DNA from: Paraphysomonas bandaiensis
Taxonomy: Eukaryota; Protista; Chrysophyceae
Length of the DNA: 64,000 bases
NCBI GenBank assembly: GCA_965644295.1
Contig: CBFFRP010000096.1
Location: forward strand, 81,344-145,343
Reading direction: 5' to 3'
Within the stretch, counting starts at the first letter, position 1; the number at the start of each line of letters is the position of its first letter. A program made the translations under genes and the position numbers. The notes beneath the pieces are model-generated. The model was not told the DNA's origin. It ran no database searches and worked only from the letters and a program-made list of their open reading frames with translations. Shown here piece by piece: positions 18,089 to 33,801 of this stretch.

Positions 18089-20010
18089 CTATTGATTTCG
18101 CTTACTTTTTCTACTGGGGCTGGACTGTGTAGAATTCATTTTGTCTTTCTTAGTAACAATCAATTTGGAGATGTTCTTCACTGTACTGCGGTCAATATAA
18201 TCGCTGCTACTAGTTACTTTCTTCGACGAATTCGATATGCCTTCGTCATAGCTCAACGCCTGACGCGTGAAGTCACTCTCTGTTTTCACCTGCGCGGCAG
18301 GAACACGGACATTTTTCTCGGAGCAGTCGGGTACAGCAGTCATCAGGTTCATGAACAGTTGTTTCTGCAAACGATTATACCCGGGCAGTTTGTGAAGGCG
18401 CGATGTCTCAGAAGTATTGTCAGAGGAGGGGAGGGCGGAGTACTCTTGTACACTCGCACTCATAGTGGAGAGGTCCTCTGGAGTTGCGTCTTTTAGCATG
18501 CGTTCACCGATCTGCTTGATGAGCTTGTTAATTTCGTCGTCCAATTTGTGCACCACATCAGGAAGCTGCAAATCAAGATGATTACGACATGTCGAACAAC
18601 TCATGTACAAAGACATGCAAATAGCCTCGTACTCACCATTTCAACCGAAACTGGTCTTCCACCATCTGGTATGAGGTCCTTGTTGACCTTCTGCAGAAAT
18701 CTGGGGACTGCTCTCCGCAGACTCTCCACACCCTTGCGCATTCTCTGATCTCGCTCCCTGCAGTCGTCGCCTTCTTTCCGAGCAGAGGTAAGAGCTGCAT
18801 CTTTCATGTCTACTTCCTGATACATTTGGCGATTAGAAGCCAACATTTGTAGCTTTCTTTGAGACCGCTCCAACAGATCTTCGATGCTTTGCTTCTTTGA
18901 CTTGTGGTTGGCTAGCTGCTCCTTGAGGTCGGCCTGCACTTGATTGAGTCGCTCTATTCGAGATGACTTGGAGTTGTAACTCGTAACTATGTCCTCGATC
19001 TGCTGGCGTGTGAGAGAAAATGAGCCATCCCGAGAGCTCGATATGTCAGTGGGAGAAGCACAGCTCTCGCCCCGTGCCCTTGGACTACTCTGTATCGCCG
19101 ACTCGTGCCCATCCAGCATTCTGTGTCCCATCTTTGTCTCCAATTCTTGGTTGCCTTTAATTCTATCAAGAGTACTATGCAGACTTTGCCGCACGCGTTC
19201 CACAGACTGCTTTCCCTCCATCACCATGCTCTGTAGCTCCTGCATCTTCTGTTGACGCTGGTCTGTGCGGCTTTTAACAGTTTTGGTCAATACCTCTACA
19301 TGGCGCTCCTCGGCCGCTAACTCGTGTTTACTCAGTCGTAAAGTACTTTCCAGTCCCGTATATTCCGCTTTGGCCTGATTCAATTGCTGTGTTAACACAT
19401 GGGACTGGGCCTTACAGTCCATGATATCTTGCTCCAGTCGATTCGATAGGTACGTCAACATGCTACGAGTTCTCGCCTCTGCTTGTATACTGTCCTCTAC
19501 TGCATCAAGATCACTCTCAATTCCAGCAATGGCACGATTATGACTCGACATATTTTCTTCCTGAGTTACCATAAAACCTTCCAGTACCTTTTTGCTATCC
19601 AAAACATCAGCAAGCTCTCGTTCCTTAACAACATTGGCAGTCCGTATACCATCGTATTCCTTTTGTAACGCCGCTAAAGCAGTGCGGGCTTTTTCCATTT
19701 CTGCAGACTGCGCTTGATTAATTTCTTTTTTCATGTTTAACAGTGCCGCAGCATCATTTTCAAGGAGCTTATCTAGATCGTCAATGTTAGAGTTCATTTT
19801 TTTCCCTCTGGCTCTGGAATCCAGCTCCGCAGACTGAGAACCCTCTGACTCCACAAATTTTCTCCCTTTGAATGTACCAGGCTTAGTAGCAGGGTTTCGG
19901 ATTCCTAGTGTAAATTTGGATTTGGAAATGGAACTCTTAGATAACTGAAACTTTGATGACGGTTGTTGTCTAGTGGACCCTCCACCGGGAACAATAGAAG
20001 TCATTGCCAT
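18089..20010 (-). CDS. Long coiled-coil protein, possibly outer dynein arm docking complex-like; 2 exons (~20010-18638, 18567-18089)
   Basis: 469-aa and 175-aa ORFs joined by a GTGAGT...TGCAG intron (VSVEM|LPDVVHKL); heptad-rich. The family assignment is only a resemblance. Confidence 0.6.
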
Positions 20011-20612
20011 CTTATAAGTGAGTTTCCTTTGTGTACTTTACTATAAGTCACTAGGAATAGTTACAGTGAGGTTATGTTTGTGTATGAGGTGGGGCTGATA
20101 TATATATATATACTCTGACAGTTACTGACTGCAGTAACAGTCACAGTAACCGTTTTTTTTCTTGAAGTACATGTGTATGTGTATGTGTATGTGAATGTAT
20201 GCATAGTGTGGTGTGTATGTACTGCTCTCTACGTATGCATGTCTACGTATATCTCTGTATATGTCTGTATATGGATTAGTCGAGAAAATTTGAGGAAAAT
20301 TTATGACTAGAACATCACACACAGCAACTCATCTGTCCATCTACCTCCCTGGGTAACCCTGTAATACGGCCGTGGACTACAGCAGGTAGGAGTATGTATA
20401 TGATACAGTTACATAGAGATCCAGTGCATGTATATACATATACACAGTACAGAGTCGAGTCTGTGTTGCACTCTCATCACTCCACACAATACACACTAAC
20501 ATCGGAACTATCAGACATATGTAAGGAAGTAGCTGGTGCTGTAAGGTTCGTTGAACATGTGATGCCCTATTTGATCTGATGGTGGTGCATACAGAGCTAT
20601 TAACAGATAGAT

Positions 20613-23600
20613 ATGTCAGCTTATGTTGTAGACGGTGAGACTTGTATACATATGATACCACTCCATATAACTCATTATTCAGGAATGGTGATTGCAAGAG
20701 AAATATTTAACGAGTTAAAGGAAGAGATTTCTTCTAATGCAACGGCTCCCTGTTTGGCGATAGTGTCAATTGGATGCACAGATGACACTTTGAAGCGCAT
20801 TGCTGCGAAAAAGACACTATGCAGCGATCTTTCCATTAAGACACTGGATATATCGCTCCCATGTAATGTGTCTCGTGAAGAAGTTCTTGCAAAAGGTATG
20901 CTGTATGCTACTTGGCATATACATTGATGCACTAACGTATATACTTTAAGTTGATGAGCTAAATATGGATCGTTCTGTTCATGGCATTGTACTAGAGCAA
21001 CCTTTTCCAGATAGCATAAACATCCAAGATGTGGTAGAGAAAATTTCTAGAGGAAAAGATGTTGAAGGGCTACACTCTAGTAATATCGCGCAGCTGACAA
21101 ACACGAAGGTTGACTGGTCTGCTAAGCGGTCGGCCTGGGACTCCCCTCAATCGGATTATCACGCGATGTGCATACCTCAGGCTTGCATCGAGATACTAGA
21201 TAGGCTTGGAATAGATATCGAGGGTAAAGACGCAGTGGTTGTTGGGAGGGCACACAATGTTGCAGTTCCTTTGAGCCTTCTTCTAATGCATCGGAATGCC
21301 ACAGTTACCATTGCACACTGCTGTACCCGCAACCTCCCAGCTGTTATTGGTAGGGCAGACATCCTGGTTAGCGCACTAGGTCGACCAGAATTTATCAAAG
21401 GCGCATGGTTGAAACCGGGTGCAACCGTCATCGATCTTGGTACTACCCGTGTGAACTCCACGGAGTCTACTTTCAAGGTGGTGGGTGACTGCGAATTCTC
21501 TTCGTGTAAGAGCAAAGCTGGGTTCATGACAGCACCAGGTCAAAACAATGGAATTGGTACTCTAGCCTTCTATATGGTTCTCAGAAATCTTCTAAACTGT
21601 ACAACTGCTGGACCTGACACTGATAGTGTTGATGGCGCGGTTGATCCGTATTTGCGTTACGGTGGGGCGTACCTTGGTGACCCCAAAGACACCACGAACT
21701 TCAAGTATGTGACTTTCTCTGAAATGCCTAAGTTTACAGATGAGCACAAGTCAGCCATGAGTCGTCACCTAACGCCAGATCTATTCAATCAGCTAAAGGA
21801 CGTCAAGTCTTCTCGCGGGTACACCCTTTCTAATGTGATCATGACAGGTGTGGTCACACCTCACCTTGGGGTAGGTGCAACTGCTGGGGATGAGAGCTGC
21901 TGGGAGGTATTCAAACCGTTGTTCAACCCAATAATCAAAGACTGGCATGGATATGACCCGGAGACACAGACCCATCCCAAAGACTTGGATCCCTCGAAGT
22001 TGGTGTTTACAGAGGAGCAAAGGAAGTTGTTTGAGGATTTTGTGGTGTCCACTCGCATACGGGCTGCCCGAAACATATCCGGTTACTCTTTACCAGCTGG
22101 CACTGATGATAAAGATCGTGCAGCGGTAGAGGCGGTACTCAAACAGGCATTTGATGGCCTTGATGGGGAATTGTCGGGTACTTATTATGAGTTAGGAGAT
22201 CTGACCACTGAGCAACGGGATTTCTTGCTTGAGAAAGGATTTCTCTTCCAAATCCCCTCTGCAAGGAACTTACTCACAGGGGCAGGTGCAGCACGCTCGT
22301 GGCCTAACAACAGAGGTATCTTTCACAATTCCGCACAAACAGCCCTGGCATGGGTCAACGAGGAGGACCACTGTCGTATTATCTCCATGGAGATGGGCGG
22401 AGATATTCCCTCAGTGTTTACTCGCTTCTGCGCACTTTCTGATGCCCTGGAGGCCTCTGCGAAGAGAAATGGTACGGAACTAATGTGGAATGAACGTTTA
22501 GGCTTTTTGGGTACCTGTCCCTCTAATCTTGGAACTGGGCTACGGGCGTCTGTAATGATTCGACTTCCTGAGTTTAATAAACTCTTGGAGGGCGGGAATC
22601 AGGAGGACAAAGAACTGCTAGACCAGGTATGCTCCGCATACGACCTACAGCCGCGTGGTTCAGCTGGAGAGCATTCTGCAGCCGTTGGAGCGAAGTTTGA
22701 TATATCTAACAAACAGCGACTTGGGTTTTCAGAAGTGCAGCTGGTTCAAAAGATGATAGACGGTGTTTCGAAAGTAATTGAATACGAAACTTTACTGGCT
22801 CAAGGTGTCGCGCCTGGTGATATACGCCGTCGGCTTTCAGATAGTATGGCTGATCCGTATTTGCGTTACGGTGGGGCGTACCTTGGTGACCCCAAAGACA
22901 CCGCGAACTTCAAGTATGTGACTTTCTCTGAAATGCCTAAGTTTACAGATGAGCACAAGTCAGCCATGAGTCGTCACCTAACGCCAGATCTATTCAATCA
23001 GCTAAAGGACGTCAAGTCTTCTCGCGGGTACACCCTTTCTAATGTGATCATGACAGGTGTGGTCACACCTCACCTTGGGGTAGGTGCAACTGCTGGGGAT
23101 GAGAGCTGCTGGGAGGTATTCAAACCGTTGTTCAACCCAATAATCAAAGACTGGCATGGATATGACCCGGAGACACAGACCCATCCCAAAGACTTGGATC
23201 CCTCGAAGTTGGTGTTTACAGAGGAGCAAAGGAAGTTGTTTGAGGATTTTGTGGTGTCCACTCGCATACGGGCTGCCCGAAACATATCCGGTTACTCTTT
23301 ACCAGCTGGCACTGATGATAAAGATCGTGCAGCGGTAGAGGCGGTACTCAAACAGGCATTTGATGGCCTTGATGGGGAATTGTCGGGTACTTATTATGAG
23401 TTAGGAGATCTGACCACTGAGCAACGGGATTTCTTGCTTGAGAAAGGATTTCTCTTCCAAATCCCCTCTGCAAGGAACTTACTCACAGGGGCAGGTGCAG
23501 CACGCTCGTGGCCTAACAACAGAGGTATCTTTCACAATTCCGCACAAACAGCCCTGGCATGGGTCAACGAGGAGGACCACTGTCGTATTATCTCCATGGA

Positions 23601-26600
23601 GATGGGCGGAGATATTCCCTCAGTGTTTACTCGCTTCTGCGCACTTTCTGATGCCCTGGAGGCCTCTGCGAAGAGAAATGGTACGGAACTAATGTGGAAT
23701 GAACGTTTAGGCTTTTTGGGTACCTGTCCCTCTAATCTTGGAACTGGGCTACGGGCGTCTGTAATGATTCGACTTCCTGAGTTTAATAAACTCTTGGAGG
23801 GCGGGAATCAGGAGGACAAAGAACTGCTAGACCAGGTATGCTCCGCATACGACCTACAGCCGCGTGGTTCAGCTGGAGAGCATTCTGCAGCCGTTGGAGC
23901 GAAGTTTGATATATCTAACAAACAGCGACTTGGGTTTTCAGAAGTGCAGCTGGTTCAAAAGATGATAGACGGTGTTTCGAAAGTAATTGAATACGAAACT
24001 TTACTGGCTCAAGGTGTCGCGCCTGGTGATATACGCCGTCGGCTTTCAGATAGTATGGCTGATCCGTATTTGCGTTACGGTGGGGCGTACCTTGGTGACC
24101 CCAAAGACACCGCGAACTTCAAGTATGTGACTTTCTCTGAAATGCCTAAGTTTACAGATGAGCACAAGTCAGCCATGAGTCGTCACCTAACGCCAGATCT
24201 ATTCAATCAGCTAAAGGACGTCAAGTCTTCTCGCGGGTACACCCTTTCTAATGTGATCATGACAGGTGTGGTCACACCTCACCTTGGGGTAGGTGCAACT
24301 GCTGGGGATGAGAGCTGCTGGGAGGTATTCAAACCGTTGTTCAACCCAATAATCAAAGACTGGCATGGATATGACCCGGAGACACAGACCCATCCCAAAG
24401 ACTTGGATCCCTCGAAGTTGGTGTTTACAGAGGAGCAAAGGAAGTTGTTTGAGGATTTTGTGGTGTCCACTCGCATACGGGCTGCCCGAAACATATCCGG
24501 TTACTCTTTACCAGCTGGCACTGATGATAAAGATCGTGCAGCGGTAGAGGCGGTACTCAAACAGGCATTTGATGGCCTTGATGGGGAATTGTCGGGTACT
24601 TATTATGAGTTAGGAGATCTGACCACTGAGCAACGGGATTTCTTGCTTGAGAAAGGATTTCTCTTCCAAATCCCCTCTGCAAGGAACTTACTCACAGGGG
24701 CAGGTGCAGCACGCTCGTGGCCTAACAACAGAGGTATCTTTCACAATTCCGCACAAACAGCCCTGGCATGGGTCAACGAGGAGGACCACTGTCGTATTAT
24801 CTCCATGGAGATGGGCGGAGATATTCCCTCAGTGTTTACTCGCTTCTGCGCACTTTCTGATGCCCTGGAGGCCTCTGCGAAGAGAAATGGTACGGAACTA
24901 ATGTGGAATGAACGTTTAGGCTTTTTGGGTACCTGTCCCTCTAATCTTGGAACTGGGCTACGGGCGTCTGTAATGATTCGACTTCCTGAGTTTAATAAAC
25001 TCTTGGAGGGCGGGAATCAGGAGGACAAAGAACTGCTAGACCAGGTATGCTCCGCATACGACCTACAGCCGCGTGGTTCAGCTGGAGAGCATTCTGCAGC
25101 CGTTGGAGCGAAGTTTGATATATCTAACAAACAGCGACTTGGGTTTTCAGAAGTGCAGCTGGTTCAAAAGATGATAGACGGTGTTTCGAAAGTAATTGAA
25201 TACGAAACTTTACTGGCTCAAGGTGTCGCGCCTGGTGATATACGCCGTCGGCTTTCAGATAGTATGGCTGATCCGTATTTGCGTTACGGTGGGGCGTACC
25301 TTGGTGACCCCAAAGACACCGCGAACTTCAAGTATGTGACTTTCTCTGAAATGCCTAAGTTTACAGATGAGCACAAGTCAGCCATGAGTCGTCACCTAAC
25401 GCCAGATCTATTCAATCAGCTAAAGGACGTCAAGTCTTCTCGCGGGTACACCCTTTCTAATGTGATCATGACAGGTGTGGTCACACCTCACCTTGGGGTA
25501 GGTGCAACTGCTGGGGATGAGAGCTGCTGGGAGGTATTCAAACCGTTGTTCAACCCAATAATCAAAGACTGGCATGGATATGACCCGGAGACACAGACCC
25601 ATCCCAAAGACTTGGATCCCTCGAAGTTGGTGTTTACAGAGGAGCAAAGGAAGTTGTTTGAGGATTTTGTGGTGTCCACTCGCATACGGGCTGCCCGAAA
25701 CATATCCGGTTACTCTTTACCAGCTGGCACTGATGATAAAGATCGTGCAGCGGTAGAGGCGGTACTCAAACAGGCATTTGATGGCCTTGATGGGGAATTG
25801 TCGGGTACTTATTATGAGTTAGGAGATCTGACCACTGAGCAACGGGATTTCTTGCTTGAGAAAGGATTTCTCTTCCAAATCCCCTCTGCAAGGAACTTAC
25901 TCACAGGGGCAGGTGCAGCACGCTCGTGGCCTAACAACAGAGGTATCTTTCACAATTCCGCACAAACAGCCCTGGCATGGGTCAACGAGGAGGACCACTG
26001 TCGTATTATCTCCATGGAGATGGGCGGAGATATTCCCTCAGTGTTTACTCGCTTCTGCGCACTTTCTGATGCCCTGGAGGCCTCTGCGAAGAGAAATGGT
26101 ACGGAACTAATGTGGAATGAACGTTTAGGCTTTTTGGGTACCTGTCCCTCTAATCTTGGAACTGGGCTACGGGCGTCTGTAATGATTCGACTTCCTGAGT
26201 TTAATAAACTCTTGGAGGGCGGGAATCAGGAGGACAAAGAACTGCTAGACCAGGTATGCTCCGCATACGACCTACAGCCGCGTGGTTCAGCTGGAGAGCA
26301 TTCTGCAGCCGTTGGAGCGAAGTTTGATATATCTAACAAACAGCGACTTGGGTTTTCAGAAGTGCAGCTGGTTCAAAAGATGATAGACGGTGTTTCGAAA
26401 GTAATTGAATACGAAACTTTACTGGCTCAAGGTGTCGCGCCTGGTGATATACGCCGTCGGCTTTCAGATAGTATGGCTGATCCGTATTTGCGTTACGGTG
26501 GGGCGTACCTTGGTGACCCCAAAGACACCGCGAACTTCAAGTATGTGACTTTCTCTGAAATGCCTAAGTTTACAGATGAGCACAAGTCAGCCATGAGTCG

Positions 26601-27675
26601 TCACCTAACGCCAGATCTATTCAATCAGCTAAAGGACGTCAAGTCTTCTCGCGGGTACACCCTTTCTAATGTGATCATGACAGGTGTGGTCACACCTCAC
26701 CTTGGGGTAGGTGCAACTGCTGGGGATGAGAGCTGCTGGGAGGTATTCAAACCGTTGTTCAACCCAATAATCAAAGACTGGCATGGATATGACCCGGAGA
26801 CACAGACCCATCCCAAAGACTTGGATCCCTCGAAGTTGGTGTTTACAGAGGAGCAAAGGAAGTTGTTTGAGGATTTTGTGGTGTCCACTCGCATACGGGC
26901 TGCCCGAAACATATCCGGTTACTCTTTACCAGCTGGCACTGATGATAAAGATCGTGCAGCGGTAGAGGCGGTACTCAAACAGGCATTTGATGGCCTTGAT
27001 GGGGAATTGTCGGGTACTTATTATGAGTTAGGAGATCTGACCACTGAGCAACGGGATTTCTTGCTTGAGAAAGGATTTCTCTTCCAAATCCCCTCTGCAA
27101 GGAACTTACTCACAGGGGCAGGTGCAGCACGCTCGTGGCCTAACAACAGAGGTATCTTTCACAATTCCGCACAAACAGCCCTGGCATGGGTCAACGAGGA
27201 GGACCACTGTCGTATTATCTCCATGGAGATGGGCGGAGATATTCCCTCAGTGTTTACTCGCTTCTGCGCACTTTCTGATGCCCTGGAGGCCTCTGCGAAG
27301 AGAAATGGTACGGAACTAATGTGGAATGAACGTTTAGGCTTTTTGGGTACCTGTCCCTCTAATCTTGGTACTGGGCTACGGGCGTCTGTAATGATTCGAC
27401 TTCCTGAGTTTAATAAACTCTTGGAGGGCGGGAATCAGGAGGACAAAGAACTGCTAGACCAGGTATGCTCCGCATACGACCTACAGCCGCGTGGTTCAGC
27501 TGGAGAGCATTCTGCAGCCGTTGGAGCGAAGTTTGATATTTCTAACAAACAGCGACTTGGGTTTTCAGAAGTGCAGCTGGTTCAAAAGATGATCGACGGT
27601 GTTTCGAAAGTAATTGAATATGAAATGTTGCTTGCTCAAGGTGTCGCGCCTGGTGATATAAGAAATCGCTTTTAG
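20613..27675 (+). CDS. FolD-like (methylene-THF dehydrogenase/cyclohydrolase) domain fused to five tandem ATP:guanidino phosphotransferase (phosphagen kinase) domains; 2319 aa; exons 20613-20634, 20683-20895, 20951-27675
   Basis: FolD motifs VHGIVLEQP, KDVEGLH, GKDAVVVGRA, NATVTIAH, ADILVSALG, WLKPGATVIDLG, VVGD. Each kinase unit has STRIRAARN, WPNNRGIF, WVNEEDHCRIISM, GTCPSNLGTGLRASV, RGSAGEH, DISNKQRLG. Confidence 0.93.
21643..27660 (+). repeat. Five in-frame tandem 1209-bp units (starts 21643, 22852, 24061, 25270, 26479), 403 aa each
   Basis: GATCCGTATTTGCGTTAC recurs at exact 1209-bp spacing, as do the secondary ORFs in the track. Confidence 0.98.
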
Positions 27676-27954: not shown

Positions 27955-28342
27955 TGTAAATGATTATCAGTACCTGGTGGGCCTCAGACATCTTGATGGA
28001 CACCTGTATTATGTTACCACCAGAGTGATAGAGAGAAGAGGAGTCATTGTTGCATATAGGAAACTAGATACGGAAGGAAATACTACCGAGGAGCAAACTC
28101 CAATTCATATCAAAGATGTAGTAAAGATGACTCACTCTACAAAGTGTCCGACAAATTTGTAGAGTGAGTATCTTTACTACATCTTTGATATGAATTGGAG
28201 TTTGCTCCTCGGTAGTATTTCCTTCCGTATCTAGTTCCTATATGCAACAATGACTCCTCTTCTCTCTATCACTCTGGTGGTAACATAATACAGGTGTCCA
28301 TCAAGATGTCTGAGGCCCTCCAGGTACTGATAATCATTTACA
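27955..28342. repeat. Long inverted repeat (fold-back), arms ~27955-28143 and 28156-28342, 12-nt spacer
   Basis: The arms are reverse complements with one substitution and two single-base indels. The same peptide (NDYQYL.GLRHLDGHLYYVTTRVIERRGVIVAYR) is encoded on both strands. Confidence 0.95.
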
Positions 28343-30843
28343 CTCTCTGCTGTTTCTGAGGTGTCGATTTGTAGATTATCTATTTCGTCGAAATACTCCT
28401 GTGAACGCTCTGGAATAGACTCATCAAAGTTAACGTTTACTGTAACAATAATAGCATCCAGCAGGTCTGGAATATATATTTGGTGTCCAACAGGTTGTTG
28501 ACATTGTCCCATATAGTATCCAGGCTTTCCCTTTTCTTTCCACTCTTTGCGGCGCAGCTCCTTCGGCACGATAGCCCATGCCTTGCAGCCCCAGATCTTC
28601 AAGTCACTCACATCTGGTGCGGTTCCAGTAATATACTCAACAGGTGAGATGTATCCTTTCGTTGTCTTCCTAGGTAACCTGCTGATCAGATATACAGCAT
28701 GCAAGACTGCTGAACCAAAATACTGATGGCATGCCACTATCGAGCAAGATAGCAAGGGCCATCTCCTTCACTGTACGATTAGTGTGTTCCGATAGCGAAT
28801 TCATTTCGGGTGTGTCACGTGGAGTCCAAGTAACTTGTACAGTCTTTGTGCTGGTGGTTTCACGTAAGTACTGCCTGACATGTTGCCCTACTAATTCTCC
28901 TGCGTCATCTGCATGATATCGTCGTAGTTGCAATCCTTCTTTGACAAGTTGGGTCTCTACCATGTCCTTCATACACTTTAACACTTCACTCCCAGTCTTG
29001 TTTTTTAAGCCATAAGCCCATACATGTTTTGCATCACTGTGCTTGAATAGTAACACATGTTTGTAGCCTTCCATCGATGGCGTGTTTAGGACTTCCATCG
29101 TATCTGCACTAAGCACCCCTCTCTCATTTGGGTTGTTGTCTAAGTTCATCAACTGGCGTGGAGTCCTGAAGTTCTTTCTGGTGAGTTTCGACCGCATGCA
29201 GGTATTACATTTGCATATCGTTTTTTTATGCTTTTTCCTGAAATATTTCTTGTCCAGATTTATTCCATCAACGAGGCCTCGGCGGTCGGACTCAGTCAGT
29301 TTATCATAGTTGACATGGCCAAGTCTTTTGTGCCATAAAATTCGCTGGTCATCAAATCCCTGCTCCTCAAGTGCTACTGAGGATTCTTCTCAAGCTGAAG
29401 TAAGTCTTCGAGTCGAACTGGATATAATCCATTAACACTTCTCTGTCTAATGAGTGTCTTCTTCGTAGTCTTATTTCGAATGACGACTTCATCATTATTG
29501 AACGTCACAACACAGCCCCTATCTGTGATGCTCTTGAGGTTCTTACTTGCTTCAGGTGCGTAGTACACCTTTTTAAAGCTTCCTACATCGCCAACACTGT
29601 GTATTGACAGTTTACCTTTGTTCGCTGTGGACATCTGCCTATCAGCGCGCTGAAGGTTGGTCATGTGGTTTTTGGAGGTGAGGATCATCTTGTTGCACCC
29701 GCTGTCTAAATAAATAACATCTGACATGCTCTGTGCTAGATTCACCTCTTCTTCCACACATATCATCGATTCATATCCCGCCTCATCTTCTGAATCATGT
29801 ACAGACACTCGCGGTTTCTTCTTTTTCTTGTAGGGTGCCGTTTCACTTCTAGGGTCTCGCCCCCGTTTAGAACTGACCACTGCAGCTTTAGCAGTCTTCA
29901 AGTGGAAGCAGTCTTTAGTCTGATGGCCTGGGATATCACATATCTCACACACAGGTAGCTTAGTTTTGTAATCACCCCTGCTTCTGTGATCTCTATCTTT
30001 TCTCTGTGATCTTGTCCCCTTCATCCTCTTTATGACATGTTCTGGAGTCTTGCACTCCCTAGCAAAGTGGCCAAGTTTTTTGCACTTATTGCATCTGCCC
30101 TTTCTCTTGTGCTCTTTCCATTTACTGTCATCCACTGCTTGATTGACACTGTCTTCCCCTGAATTTTGCAACGCATGCTTGCCGAATGATGTGTTTTCAT
30201 ACCCTTTGATTAGGCTGCTTGCTCTTGCGTATGTCACATTGTTTGCTGTATACAGGCTGTGTGCTAGTTGGGAATATCTCTTGTCTGTGAGACCTTCCTT
30301 TAGTCGAGTGAGCTTGTCGTCTTCCGTGACTTCACGACCTAGATTCTCGAGAATCTTGGCCTGGGCTTCAACGCTGTCGACGAACTCTGCTCCTGACTGA
30401 CTTGAGGTAATCTTCATTGAATTGAACTTTGTGACCTCTGCCTGTACTGTATTCTTTTCAACATTGAGAAATCTCTCTTCCAGTGCCTGTAGTAACGCTT
30501 TTGCTGTACTTCCTTCGTAGAGAGCCGCTGTTGTTCCTGCTTTTGGATGAGCATTGCACACTTCCATCAGGAAGGAGTACGCGGTCTCGTTCCGGGTGTT
30601 CCAGAGTTTCTTCGCTTTGCGTAGTCGCTTCTTCTGTGCATCAGTCATATGAGCACCCGCTGAGACTGTAGAGTCTAGATCATGAATGTGCCTTGGTTTA
30701 TCCTTTGAGAGGACAAGATGAGCTCGATTGTGTCTCATGAGGAATGAGGTGAAGAACTTCTTGAATTTCTTGAAGTTCAGTTCCTCGAAGGGAGGTACCT
30801 TTGAGCCTGAGGCGACATTCGCGAAATTTCCATCCGCTACCAT
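28156..30843 (-). mobile_element. Ty1/Copia LTR retrotransposon, degenerate gag-protease-integrase, truncated before RT/RNase H
   Basis: Gag with two CCHC knuckles (CNKCKKLGHFAREC, CEICDIPGHQTKDC); protease YLDSGC; LWHKRLGHVNY...CNTC; integrase SADT..., HADDAGE, PEMNSLSE; post-integrase DLKIWGCKAW. PR-INT order is Copia-type. Frameshifts/stops near 29374 and 28715. No LTR pair found. Confidence 0.9.
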
Positions 30844-32286: not shown

Positions 32287-33801
32287 ATGATGCATCGTAT
32301 TGTCAACGGTCGTCACTCTGGAGGGTCTCTGCGGTATGCGCATAGACACTTAACGTCCTTACAAGAGCAGAACTCACAGGGCTTTGAGTTTACTATACTT
32401 AATGAAGGGAAGGCTGATAAGCAGCGATTGGGTGAATTAAAGACACCTCACGGCAGTATTATGACTCCAGCATTTGTGTTTTGTGCGACTAAAGCTGCCA
32501 TGAAAGGAATAACGCCTCAAACTCTTGTCGATGAAGATACACAGATAATATTATCCAACACATACCATCTCATGCTGAATCCTGGAGCTGACTTAATTGA
32601 TAGATTAGGAGGTTTGCATAAATTTACTGGATGGAACGGGCCAATGCTAACAGATTCTGGGGGCTATCAGATATTTAGTATGGGTCACGGGTCGGTAAGT
32701 GAAGAGATCAAGGGGAAGGGGGGTGGACGTCCTGTTGGATGGAACAAGACACTGCTGCGCATTGACGAGACGGGCGCGTCCTTCAAATCGTATGTGGACG
32801 GATCGATACACTACTTGACTCCTGAGCTATCTATTCAGATTCAAAGAAAGCTGGGAGCTGACCTGGTAGTGGTTCTGGACGAATGTACACCGTTTAACGT
32901 CGATAGGGAGTACACAGAACAGTCGATGCACCGATCGCATAGATGGGCGGACCGTTCCCTAGCGGAGTTCAATAGGAGTTCGCGGGATGATAGAAAGCAG
33001 GCTCTATATGGCATAGTCCAGGGGGGGGTGCACCGAGACCTGAGGGAAGAGAGCGCTGACTTTGTTAACTCTCGACCATTCTTTGGATCAGCGATAGGAG
33101 GTAGTTTGGGGGCAGACAGGGGCACCATGGGAAGGGTAGTTGCTTACACCAGGTCATTACTTCGAGAGGATCGACCTGTGCATCTGCTTGGTATAGGGGG
33201 GGTGGGAGACATATTTCATGGTGTTAGACAGGGCATCGATACCTTTGATTGCGTGCACCCGACCAGGTTGGGTAGACATGGGGGAGCGTTAGTTAAAGCT
33301 GAGTACTGGGAGAGAGAAGATGAGCACTTTGTTAGTAGTGACATTAGTAATGAAGGGTTAGTGGAGGAAACAGACATGACAGGAGTGGAGAAAGGCAGTC
33401 AGGAGGAGAGAGAACTTAGGAAAAGAAACAGTGTCGCGAAGGCGAAAAGAAGACAAAGAGAGCAGCAGGCAAAGGCCCTGGCTCATCGCAGTCCCCGACA
33501 ACATATCAACTTGACGAAAGGTCCCTTTCGTGGCGATCCCAGACCAATCGATTCGTCTTGTCAATGCTACACATGTAGGAATTTCTCCAGGGGATACATT
33601 CATCACCTCTTTAAGAGTAATGAAATGCTTGGGCCTATGTTGGTTACTTCGCACAACGTTCACTTCATGAATAAACTGATGTCTGACATCAGAACTGGAA
33701 TTGCAAATGATACATTAGATGAGGTCGAGGCGCAATATGTTCCCGAGAATCTTCGTCATAAGAAAATAGATGCAGCAGAATTGCCAAACCTTGTGTTATA
33801 G
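32287..33801 (+). CDS. tgt: Queuine tRNA-ribosyltransferase (tRNA-guanine transglycosylase), intronless, N-terminal extension
   Basis: TPHG..TPAF, ILSNTYHL, MLTDSGGYQIFS, LDECTP, GIVQGG, HLLGIG, DTFDCVHPTR, zinc site CQCYTC...HN. Confidence 0.95.
   Translation: MMHRIVNGRHSGGSLRYAHRHLTSLQEQNSQGFEFTILNEGKADKQRLGELKTPHGSIMTPAFVFCATKAAMKGITPQTLVDEDTQIILSNTYHLMLNPGADLIDRLGGLHKFTGWNGPMLTDSGGYQIFSMGHGSVSEEIKGKGGGRPVGWNKTLLRIDETGASFKSYVDGSIHYLTPELSIQIQRKLGADLVVVLDECTPFNVDREYTEQSMHRSHRWADRSLAEFNRSSRDDRKQALYGIVQGGVHRDLREESADFVNSRPFFGSAIGGSLGADRGTMGRVVAYTRSLLREDRPVHLLGIGGVGDIFHGVRQGIDTFDCVHPTRLGRHGGALVKAEYWEREDEHFVSSDISNEGLVEETDMTGVEKGSQEERELRKRNSVAKAKRRQREQQAKALAHRSPRQHINLTKGPFRGDPRPIDSSCQCYTCRNFSRGYIHHLFKSNEMLGPMLVTSHNVHFMNKLMSDIRTGIANDTLDEVEAQYVPENLRHKKIDAAELPNLVL

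What the first reader, a model, noticed from the sequence alone, without database searches (positions are those of the whole stretch)
20613..22851. FolD-like one-carbon enzyme domain fused to a phosphagen kinase
Seen: the FolD NAD(P)-binding half and the first kinase domain lie in one uninterrupted exon (20951 onward), joined by a short acidic linker (TTAGPDTDSVDGAV), so the fusion does not depend on my splice prediction. Established: FolD interconverts methylene/methenyl/formyl-THF using NAD(P); phosphagen kinases buffer ATP; the known FolD fusion is to formyl-THF synthetase (C1-THF synthase), not to guanidino kinases. Inference: the FolD module may couple ATP buffering to redox/folate state or provide dimerisation, since FolD is a dimer. 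I do not know a characterised example.
Basis: partly seen in the sequence, partly recalled or inferred. Interest (0 to 1): 0.82.

Follow-up and report, generated by a model that had tools for sequence, protein, structure and literature searches.

The report
FolD-like head fused to phosphagen kinases
A colourless golden-alga flagellate (Paraphysomonas) encodes one giant protein in which a remodelled, probably non-catalytic copy of the folate enzyme FolD sits in front of five intact ATP-buffering phosphagen kinases. The fusion also occurs in three uncultured relatives and I found no description of it, but its expression and function are untested.

Summary
A three-exon gene (20613-27675, + strand) encodes a FolD-like domain with both halves, a 14-residue linker and five 403-residue phosphagen kinase (PK) units in one frame. 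The FolD/PK junction lies inside the 6.7 kb third exon.

The same architecture, with 1 or 2 PK units, is present on three independent environmental contigs. Their synonymous sites are saturated against the window. The FolD-like part is still under purifying selection, and a phase-1 intron is shared at the same codon, so this is one old fusion.

The FolD-like part is a divergent paralogue of the organism's own FolD. Every family member has lost Tyr52, Asp125, Thr148 and the PGGVGPMT loop. The window copy also changed Gln100, Ser174, Gly178 and Ser197. The Rossmann core and the dimer strand are kept. The PK units keep all catalytic motifs and are 81% identical to an N-myristoyl-type single-domain PK of the same genome; the FolD-like head replaces that leader.

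Best reading: a non-catalytic, dimerising head on a high-valency PK. Redox or folate coupling is not supported. No read or transcript evidence could be obtained, and the number of identical middle units is unverified. Other first-stage notes of this scan cover the same stretch of this genome.

The parts
20613..20634 (+). Exon 1: start codon and MSAYVVD plus the first base of a Gly codon (start of the FolD-like N-terminal half).
   Evidence: An in-frame stop lies at 20601-20603. The donor G|GTGAG is at 20634/20635. After splicing the N-terminus reads ..VVDG-MVIAREI.., the usual FolD start.
20635..20682 (+). Intron 1 (48 nt, GT..AG, in frame and without a stop, so retention would also keep the frame).
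   Evidence: Read from the sequence. The ORF 20613..20927 reads through it.
20683..20895 (+). Exon 2: FolD-like N-terminal ('catalytic') half. Lys56 is kept and Tyr52 is replaced by Arg.
   Evidence: PF00763 gives 27.2 bits, below the 32.8 cut-off.
20896..20950 (+). Intron 2 (55 nt, phase 1, G|GTATG..AG|TT). The same position and phase are found in two environmental orthologues.
   Evidence: window G|GTATGC..TTAAG|TT; L023 G|GTATGG..CTAG|TG; L021 G|GTGCGA..TCAG|TA. Each case rebuilds a Val codon before xELN.
20951..21600 (+). First part of exon 3: end of the N-terminal half plus the FolD-like NAD(P)-binding (Rossmann) half, with a remodelled active-site pocket.
   Evidence: PF02882 gives 137.5 bits. 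The match to human MTHFD1 DC domain 1a4i has E = 2.7e-34. It is 45% identical to the genome's own canonical FolD.
21601..21642 (+). Linker TTAGPDTDSVDGAV.
   Evidence: Translation. In the orthologues the linker is much longer and evolves almost neutrally (pN 0.47-0.69).
21643..22851 (+). Phosphagen kinase unit 1 (403 aa).
   Evidence: It differs from units 2-4 by 2 nt.
22852..26478 (+). Phosphagen kinase units 2, 3 and 4 (3 x 1209 nt, identical to each other at the DNA level).
   Evidence: The copy number of the identical units could not be checked against reads.
26479..27675 (+). Phosphagen kinase unit 5 (398 aa) with its own C-terminal end and the stop codon.
   Evidence: There are 21 nt differences from units 2-4, mostly in the last 60 nt.

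Best explanation
This is a genuine, old gene fusion of a chrysophyte lineage; the window genome is Paraphysomonas. A duplicate of the cell's own eukaryote-type FolD was joined to the N-terminus of a chrysophyte-type phosphagen kinase, exactly where the single-domain paralogues carry an MGAGAS (N-myristoylation-type) leader. The FolD-like head has lost canonical folate-site residues and, in this species, several NADP-contact residues as well, but it keeps the Rossmann core and the strand that forms the FolD dimer interface. I therefore read it as a non-catalytic pseudo-enzyme that dimerises the chain, and perhaps docks it. A flexible linker connects it to five catalytically competent kinase units, so a dimer would carry ten active sites. 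The units have the short guanidino-specificity loop and the GEHS motif of arginine/taurocyamine-type kinases, not those of creatine kinase. The unit number (1, 2 or 5 in different lineages) was expanded recently and independently, or is homogenised by gene conversion. Shown here: the architecture, its conservation, purifying selection on the head, the residue losses, the intact kinase motifs and the origin of both parts. Inferred: loss of FolD activity, dimerisation, a soluble rather than membrane-anchored location, and the substrate class.
For: Architecture. The fusion occurs elsewhere: P0001 (FolD-like + 2 PK units, metagenome scaffold L021), P0005 (FolD-like + a roughly 85-residue linker + 1 PK, L023) and P0006/L022 (frame open from the contig start through FolD-like and 1 PK). 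A phase-1 intron is shared at the same codon in the window, L021 and L023. Nei-Gojobori counts between the four loci give pS 0.68-0.94 (saturated); pN is 0.15-0.39 for the head, 0.47-0.69 for the linker and 0.095-0.147 for the PK part. The PK units of all fusion proteins form one clade (SH-aLRT 96) inside the chrysophyte PK clade, and the units of one protein group together. The FolD-like heads form one clade (SH-aLRT 100) on a long stem, nested (SH-aLRT 98) with the genome's own canonical FolD. Against 122 canonical sequences, all family members differ at Y52, L98, D125, G133, T148, G151, V236, N239, V255, V270, V274, T278 and L282. The window also has Q100E, S174A, G178A and S197C. K56, G172-R173, P180, N189-T193, H196, G217, D235, G237 and G272-G273 are kept. 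A homodimer model scores ipSAE 0.45 against a best of 3 controls of 0.01. That mark was reached by 21 of 30 proteins solved as pairs of one chain and by 0 of 23 solved as single chains. The runs agree in at least 92% of contacts, the partner pLDDT is at least 57, and the interface is at residues 90-131 around the ATVTIA strand. The kinase motifs STRIRAARN, NEEDHCRIISM, CPSNLGTGLRASV and RGSAGEHS align to solved arginine, taurocyamine and creatine kinases. The GS loop is 4 residues shorter than in creatine kinase B and equal in length to the Anthopleura arginine kinase loop. A unit is 81% identical to the single-domain PK at C414, which starts MGAGAS.. and aligns from DPYL onwards.
Against: Lys56, Arg173 and the Gly-rich loop glycines are retained, and the changed pocket residues are themselves conserved within the family (CIP/CLP, GDC, GTT, G-I/L-G-x-L-S/A-F). 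This pattern is also what a pocket with a new ligand would show. The dimer pass may reflect the model's memory of solved FolD dimers. Two members of the same FolD-like clade show no kinase: P0272, an MMETSP transcript marked complete that ends in a Pro-rich tail, and P0122. The head can therefore exist alone. Units 2-4 are identical, so an assembler could have the copy number wrong.
Confidence: 0.5

Rival explanations
1. The FolD-like head still binds NADP(H), NAD(H) or a folate/pterin-like ligand in a remodelled pocket. It acts as an allosteric sensor that tunes the attached kinases to redox or one-carbon state.
For: The head is under purifying selection. Lys56, Arg173, His196, Thr199 and the G272/G273/G275 loop glycines are kept. 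The substituted pocket residues are conserved within the family rather than random. P0001, L022 and P0005 keep GRS and HSST.
Against: The window copy has S174A, G178A and S197C at positions that are 92-100% conserved in canonical enzymes. Gly178 is also lost in the P0005/P0272/P0122 branch. The linker is short here, long and nearly neutral elsewhere, which is a poor design for allosteric transmission.
Confidence: 0.2
2. The head is a docking module. It pairs with the genuine FolD of the cell (a pseudo-enzyme/enzyme heterodimer) or with another partner, and so places the kinase array at a particular site (cytosolic metabolon, axoneme or cytoskeleton).
For: The dimer-interface strand is the best-conserved part and matches the canonical paralogue: NATVTI in both the head and own FolD C441. 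The head replaced a myristoylation-type targeting leader. The stand-alone relative P0272 carries a poly-proline tail of the kind bound by cytoskeletal adaptors. Phosphagen kinases are linked to the zoospore stage in oomycetes (PMC10072465).
Against: There are no localisation data and no co-occurrence analysis.
Confidence: 0.15
3. The protein is a true bifunctional enzyme: an active methylene-THF dehydrogenase/cyclohydrolase, or a related oxidoreductase, physically coupled to ATP buffering.
For: Both FolD halves are present. Lys56 is kept in all members. The relative P0272 scores 103 bits on the catalytic-domain model.
Against: Tyr52, Asp125 and Thr148 are replaced in every member, and Gln100 is replaced in the window and in P0001. 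The PGGVGPMT loop carries an insertion and substitutions. The window's N-terminal half scores below the Pfam cut-off. The genome has two ordinary FolD genes, at C441 and C127, for the housekeeping reaction.
Confidence: 0.07
4. The fusion is an artefact: two neighbouring genes, or a misassembly, that only appear fused; or the locus is not expressed as one polypeptide.
For: There is no expression evidence. Units 2-4 are identical and could be mis-counted. No window-identical protein appears in the searched collections.
Against: Four independent assemblies keep the FolD-like part and the kinase in one stop-free frame across linkers of about 14 to 85 residues, although synonymous sites are saturated. 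Unit 1 has no start codon or leader of its own, whereas the single-domain paralogues do. The two module trees are compatible with each other.
Confidence: 0.05

Closest known systems
Contiguous multi-domain phosphagen kinases: two-domain arginine kinase of Anthopleura (PDB 4rf6), two-domain taurocyamine kinase of Schistosoma (4wo8) and of other trematodes (PMC3018575), two-domain oomycete kinases (P0011-P0018). From memory only: the three-domain flagellar creatine kinase of sea-urchin sperm.
   Same: Several complete kinase units lie head to tail on one polypeptide. The best solved match is 4rf6 (E = 4.7e-144, both of its domains aligned), followed by 4wo8. All catalytic motifs are kept.
   Different: There are five units instead of two or three, and the units are nearly identical at the DNA level. 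A non-kinase enzyme-derived domain sits at the N-terminus. None of the listed proteins carries a FolD-like domain (Pfam columns).
C1-tetrahydrofolate synthase (MTHFD1/ADE3-type): FolD domain fused to formyl-THF synthetase.
   Same: A eukaryotic FolD-type domain forms the N-terminal module of a multi-domain protein. The human dehydrogenase/cyclohydrolase domain is the best solved match of the head.
   Different: The partner is PF01268, in the same pathway, and the FolD part is catalytically intact. Here the partner is unrelated to folate metabolism and the FolD part has lost Y52, D125 and T148 and has an altered loop.
Phosphagen kinase + adenylate kinase fusion of Ochromonas sp. CCMP1393 (P0385) and P0104, found here.
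   Same: It has a chrysophyte-type PK of the same clade joined to a second nucleotide-related domain. This shows that the PK lineage takes part in fusions.
   Different: The extra domain is C-terminal, is a plausible active adenylate kinase (PF00406) and makes functional sense for energy shuttling. The N-terminus keeps the MGxxxS leader.
Two other multi-kinase genes of the same genome (C298, L018; C78:96374-103648): conserved N-terminal motif, acidic repeats, then four 350-residue PK units.
   Same: The plan is the same: an N-terminal non-kinase head, a low-complexity spacer, then a tandem array of near-identical PK units.
   Different: They belong to a different, very divergent PK clade (stem length 2.08). 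They have a different head with no Pfam match and no FolD-like domain.

Membership tests
FolD / MTHFD dehydrogenase-cyclohydrolase (THF_DHG_CYH) | NAD(P)-binding domain PF02882 above the curated cut-off. | tested here: met
   137.5 bits against a cut-off of 27. E = 2.7e-34 to human 1a4i.
FolD / MTHFD dehydrogenase-cyclohydrolase (THF_DHG_CYH) | N-terminal catalytic domain PF00763 above the curated cut-off. | tested here: inconclusive
   Scored exon by exon because the spliced protein was not joined: 27.2 bits on exon 2 and 19.1 bits on the start of exon 3, each below 32.8. The family member P0272 scores 103 bits.
FolD / MTHFD dehydrogenase-cyclohydrolase (THF_DHG_CYH) | YxxxK motif (human Tyr52, Lys56). 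| tested here: not met
   Lys56 is kept. Tyr52 is Arg in the window, Val in L021, and Ser in L023 and P0272. Tyr is present in 97% of 122 canonical sequences.
FolD / MTHFD dehydrogenase-cyclohydrolase (THF_DHG_CYH) | Gln100 and Asp125 of the folate site, each 100% conserved in the canonical set. | tested here: not met
   The window has Glu at both positions. Asp125 is Glu or Ser in all six family members.
FolD / MTHFD dehydrogenase-cyclohydrolase (THF_DHG_CYH) | NADP-site residues G172-R173-S174, G178 and S197, and the PGGVGPMT loop. | tested here: not met
   G172 and R173 are kept. The window has S174A, G178A and S197C. The loop reads APGQNNGIGTLAF, with an insertion.
FolD / MTHFD dehydrogenase-cyclohydrolase (THF_DHG_CYH) | Homodimer through the NAD(P)-binding domains. 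| tested here: inconclusive
   The model supports binding: ipSAE 0.45 against 0.01 for the best of 3 controls. That mark was reached by 21 of 30 proteins solved as pairs of one chain and by 0 of 23 solved as single chains. The runs agree in at least 92% of contacts and pLDDT is at least 57. The pass may come from memory of solved FolD dimers.
Phosphagen (ATP:guanidino) kinase | PF02807 + PF00217 in each unit, above the cut-offs. | tested here: met
   Five stretches of each model, 412 and 1050 bits in total.
Phosphagen (ATP:guanidino) kinase | Catalytic motifs: reactive Cys in CPSNLGT, Arg of STRIR and RASV, Glu of NEEDH, and the RGxxGE loop. | tested here: met
   All align to 4rf6, 4wo8 and creatine kinase B. 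They are the same in all five units, because the only amino-acid differences between units are at unit positions 1, 19, 384 and 397 onwards.
Creatine kinase (the automatic JGI name of relatives) | Full-length guanidino-specificity loop and the GVDT-type C-terminal loop of creatine kinases. | tested here: not met
   The loop is 4 residues shorter than in creatine kinase B. The C-terminal loop reads GEHS, as in arginine and taurocyamine kinases. The substrate itself cannot be tested with these tools.

The most novel reading that the evidence does not exclude
The remodelled FolD pocket binds a nucleotide or pterin-like ligand, or the head pairs with the cell's genuine FolD. Either way, phosphagen buffering in these flagellates would be wired directly to redox or one-carbon/purine metabolism. 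That would be a new kind of regulated or tethered phosphagen kinase built on a pseudo-enzyme.
Probability: 0.2. Interest if true: 0.8.

Novelty: new variant of a known kind. Interest (0 to 1): 0.55.

Why it matters
Phosphagen kinases of protists are little studied. Known contiguous forms have two or three units and no foreign domain. This protein has a folate-enzyme-derived head that has been kept under selection across deeply diverged lineages while it lost its catalytic signature. That makes it a clean natural case of an enzyme recruited as a structural or regulatory module. If the head dimerises, the result is a ten-site kinase particle. It would show how heterotrophic nanoflagellates, major marine bacterivores, organise ATP buffering without a membrane anchor. 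It also corrects the automatic 'creatine kinase' label on relatives.

Tried and rejected

2. Exhaustive HMMER search with the 225-residue head. No fusion showed up among the best 150 hits. The likely reason is that fusion proteins sit in 50%-identity clusters represented by plain kinases. The hits were canonical FolDs plus one more family member (P0122).

3. Word search for long relatives of 1230-3913 aa. It found only unrelated C1-THF-synthase-containing giants, and no orthologue with three or more units.

4. JGI metagenome scan with the family alignment. It returned 39 loci, all at or below 43% identity (at most 38% over full-length matches), none of the fused family and apparently ordinary FolDs. 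The patterns KDV[ES]GLH and C[IL]P..AC are not specific enough.

5. AlphaFold2 model of the head's C-terminal half from 5 sequences. Mean pLDDT was 57.9, and only the Rossmann core (residues 70-165) was confident. I judged it too poor for a fold search, so none was run.

6. Literature. No paper holds both 'phosphagen kinase' and 'methylenetetrahydrofolate dehydrogenase'. Searches on chrysophyte phosphagen kinases found nothing relevant. The query 'FolD' + 'pseudoenzyme' matched the word 'fold' and was useless.

7. The spliced protein (exons 1+2+3) was not joined, following the operators' rule. Exons were translated, scanned and aligned separately by reference.

8. The rival 'two adjacent genes' was rejected on the four-lineage stop-free frame.
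Full report
WHAT IS THERE

The + strand between 20613 and 27675 carries one gene. The ORF list shows an uninterrupted 2236-codon frame from 20965 to 27675. Pfam places a THF_DHG_CYH_C domain at residues 66-212 of it (137.5 bits, cut-off 27). This is followed by five pairs of ATP-gua_PtransN and ATP-gua_Ptrans domains.

The sequence upstream shows two short introns.
- Intron 1 is 20635-20682, 48 nt, and is in frame.
- Intron 2 is 20896-20950, 55 nt, phase 1, with G|GTATG..AG.
- With these removed, exon 1 (20613-20634) and exon 2 (20683-20895) supply the N-terminal half of a FolD fold.
- PF00763 matches exon 2 at 27.2 bits and the first 34 residues of exon 3 at 19.1 bits. Each is under the 32.8 cut-off.

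They were handled separately by reference throughout.

The linker TTAGPDTDSVDGAV lies at 21601-21642 and runs straight into DPYLRYGG of kinase unit 1.

The kinase part is an array of five units with a period of 1209 nt. Units 2, 3 and 4 are identical at every base. Unit 1 differs by 2 nt. Unit 5 differs by 21 nt, mostly in its last 60 nt, where it ends in its own C-terminus and stop.

WHOSE GENOME

The assembly has 62.5 Mb in 669 contigs. One of its single-domain kinases (contig C414) is 448/448 identical to an MMETSP1103 transcript labelled with taxid 36769, the genus Paraphysomonas, a colourless phagotrophic chrysophyte. The window is therefore from Paraphysomonas or something nearly identical to that culture.

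IS THE FUSION REAL?

I could get no reads. The evidence is comparative instead.

A word search of 5.8 billion proteins, using the head plus one unit as query, returned three other proteins with PF00763/PF02882 together with PF02807/PF00217.
- P0001 is 1076 aa, with a head and two units, on an 11.8 kb metagenome scaffold (L021).
- P0005 is 711 aa, with a head, a roughly 85-residue acidic/proline-rich linker and one unit (L023).
- P0006 is 570 aa, with a head and one unit. On its contig L022 the frame stays open back to the contig start, through more of the head.

In L021 and L023 the N-terminal half lies on a separate upstream exon. The intron sits at the same codon, in the same phase, and rebuilds the same Val codon as in the window.

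Nei-Gojobori counts between the four loci show the following.
- Synonymous differences are saturated everywhere (pS 0.68-0.94), so these are deeply separated lineages.
- Non-synonymous differences in the head are 0.15-0.39.
- In the linker they are 0.47-0.69, close to neutral.
- In the kinase they are 0.095-0.147.

A stop-free frame kept across four linkers of very different length, with a constrained head on one side and a constrained kinase on the other, is not what two neighbouring genes or a misassembly would give.

WHERE THE PARTS CAME FROM

In a tree of kinase units, all units of the four fusion proteins form one clade (SH-aLRT 96). That clade sits inside a well-supported clade (SH-aLRT 100) of chrysophyte-type single-domain kinases from Paraphysomonas, Mallomonas, Hydrurales, Ochromonas and Ectocarpus. 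The units of one protein group with each other: window u1/u2/u5 at 99, and P0001 u1/u2 at 99.

The fusion therefore happened once. The number of units then grew separately in each lineage, or is kept uniform by conversion.

A window unit is 81% identical to the genome's own single-domain kinase. The alignment starts exactly at DPYL. The 44 residues before that in the single-domain protein begin MGAGAS, an N-myristoylation-type start. In the fusion, the head and linker take that place.

The heads also form one clade (SH-aLRT 100) on a long stem. It is nested (SH-aLRT 98) with the genome's own canonical FolD on contig C441 and similar eukaryotic FolDs that share an insertion after the NIAxL motif. 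Identity to the own FolD is 45%. The two module trees do not conflict.

STATE OF THE FolD-LIKE HEAD

I aligned the six family members against 122 canonical FolD/MTHFD sequences from the searches. The six are the window, P0001/L021, L022, P0005/L023, P0272 and P0122. I listed the columns conserved in at least 85% of the canonical set, numbered as in the human enzyme.

- Changed in every family member: Y52, L98, D125 (to E or S), G133, T148 (to I or L), G151, V236, N239, V255 (to C), V270, V274, T278 and L282.
- Changed at Q100: E in the window and H in P0001.
- Changed only in the window: S174A, G178A and S197C.
- Altered loop: the PGGVGPMT loop carries an insertion and reads APGQNNGIGTLAF.
- Kept: K56, K122-D123, G165, G172-R173, P180, L185, N189-A-T-V-T193, H196, T199, G217, D235, G237, G253-D254, G272-G273, G275 and N286.

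HMMER's alignment to human 1a4i gives the same result for Q100, D125, R173 and S197.

From my own knowledge of the human enzyme's structure and mutagenesis, Y52/K56, Q100 and D125 line the folate site, and R173/S197 hold the 2'-phosphate of NADP. This was not tested here. On that basis canonical dehydrogenase/cyclohydrolase activity is unlikely, and NADP binding is doubtful in this species.

The genome has ordinary FolD genes for the housekeeping reaction: C441 at 201 bits and C127 at 150 bits.

The head is clearly under selection, and the invariant block covers the strand NATVT. A homodimer model of the exon-3 part scored ipSAE 0.45 against a best of 3 controls of 0.01.
- That mark was reached by 21 of 30 proteins solved as pairs of one chain and by 0 of 23 solved as single chains.
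- The runs agree in at least 92% of contacts, and the partner pLDDT is at least 57.
- The contacts lie at residues 90-131, centred on that strand.
- The tool warns that a pass for a family with solved dimers may be memory. I take it as showing that the interface is still FolD-like, not that this copy binds.

STATE OF THE KINASES

Each unit aligns end to end with both domains of the Anthopleura two-domain arginine kinase (4rf6, E = 4.7e-144), with the Schistosoma taurocyamine kinase (4wo8) and with creatine kinases. It keeps STRIRAARN, NEEDHCRIISM, CPSNLGTGLRASV and RGSAGEHS.

Against creatine kinase B, the guanidino-specificity loop is 4 residues shorter, the same length as in the sea-anemone arginine kinase. 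The C-terminal loop reads GEHS rather than GVDT. PMC3018575 summarises the proposal that this loop marks substrate size.

I therefore expect arginine, taurocyamine or a related larger guanidino substrate, not creatine. The JGI label 'creatine kinase' on relatives is probably wrong about the substrate. The amino-acid differences between units are only at unit positions 1, 19, 384 and 397 onwards, so all five units should be equally competent.

HOW IT MOST LIKELY WORKS

My best reading (confidence 0.5) is that the head is a pseudo-enzyme that holds two chains together through the old FolD interface. A flexible linker then carries a string of active kinase units, giving a soluble particle with ten sites in this species.

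Replacing the myristoylation-type leader suggests a shift from a membrane or flagellar-membrane location to another place. That step is inference only.

The rivals are as follows.
- A ligand-sensing head (0.2). It is favoured by the family-specific conservation of the new pocket residues and disfavoured by the extra erosion of the NADP site in the window.
- A docking head that pairs with the true FolD or another partner (0.15, untested).
- A truly bifunctional enzyme (0.07).
- An artefact or a non-co-translated locus (0.05).

CAVEATS

- There is no expression evidence of any kind.
- The copy number of the identical middle units is unverified.
- Two members of the head clade show no kinase. P0272 is an MMETSP transcript marked complete: 377 aa, PF00763 at 103 bits, with a proline-rich tail. 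P0122 is the second. Head-only proteins or isoforms may therefore exist.
- No orthologue with three or more units was found.

COMPARISON WITH WHAT IS KNOWN

Contiguous two-domain arginine and taurocyamine kinases are established. A three-domain flagellar creatine kinase is known to me from memory. FolD fused to formyl-THF synthetase is the classic C1-THF synthase, and it dominated the longer hits.

In the part of the literature I could search, I found no paper combining a phosphagen kinase with a FolD-type domain. Most of the protist phosphagen-kinase literature is in journals the library does not hold.

I file this as a new variant of a known kind: a multi-domain phosphagen kinase with a new, enzyme-derived head.

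Other first-stage notes of this scan describe the same stretch: the fusion, an eroded FolD, and a homogenised array. Their claims agree with what I tested here.

Noticed in passing
G000:C298:471880-476902 (L018:3881-8905) and G000:C78:96374-103648 (- strand; L019/L020): Two further giant phosphagen-kinase genes lie in the same genome. Each has a shared N-terminal motif (..EEFVEWAEDV..VFRYFV / ..DFVLWASEV..VYRYFV), long acidic Asp/Ala/Thr-rich repeats, and then four near-identical 350-residue kinase units. These units sit on a very long branch (2.08) in the unit tree. The N-terminal 280 residues have no Pfam match.
   Followed up: partly
P0385 (Ochromonas sp. CCMP1393, MMETSP0004) and P0104: A chrysophyte phosphagen kinase with an MGxxxS start is fused at its C-terminus to an adenylate kinase (PF00406). 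This is a second kind of PK fusion in the same kinase clade.
   Followed up: partly
G000:C414:25067-26410 (- strand; L012:1441-2784) and G000:C78:276158-276826 region (L013): Two single-domain kinases start MGAGASAVEQ (an N-myristoylation-type start). The C414 copy is 100% identical over 448 residues to a Paraphysomonas MMETSP1103 transcript, which identifies the organism.
   Followed up: yes
P0272 (MMETSP transcript, 377 aa): This is a stand-alone member of the same FolD-like clade. It ends in a roughly 50-residue poly-proline tail (PPPPPLPP..PPPPPPF) instead of a kinase. It could be a loss of the kinase, an isoform or an assembly end.
   Followed up: partly
window 28231-30843 (- strand): ORFs of a copia-like retroelement (gag with a CCHC zinc knuckle, and integrase-like pieces) begin about 550 bp downstream of the kinase gene's stop.
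   Followed up: no
window 32287-33801 (+ strand): A 504-residue ORF looks like a queuine/tRNA-guanine transglycosylase, judged by eye from its motifs. It was not scanned.
   Followed up: no
window 18601-20010 (- strand): A 469-residue coiled-coil-like ORF lies directly upstream and divergent from the fusion gene. It has no Pfam match.
   Followed up: partly
G000:C289:4696-5178 (L004): A third, very divergent FolD-type NAD(P)-binding domain (53.5 bits) is present in the genome. It has KDVEGL and CTP motifs but an otherwise unusual sequence. It was not analysed further.
   Followed up: no
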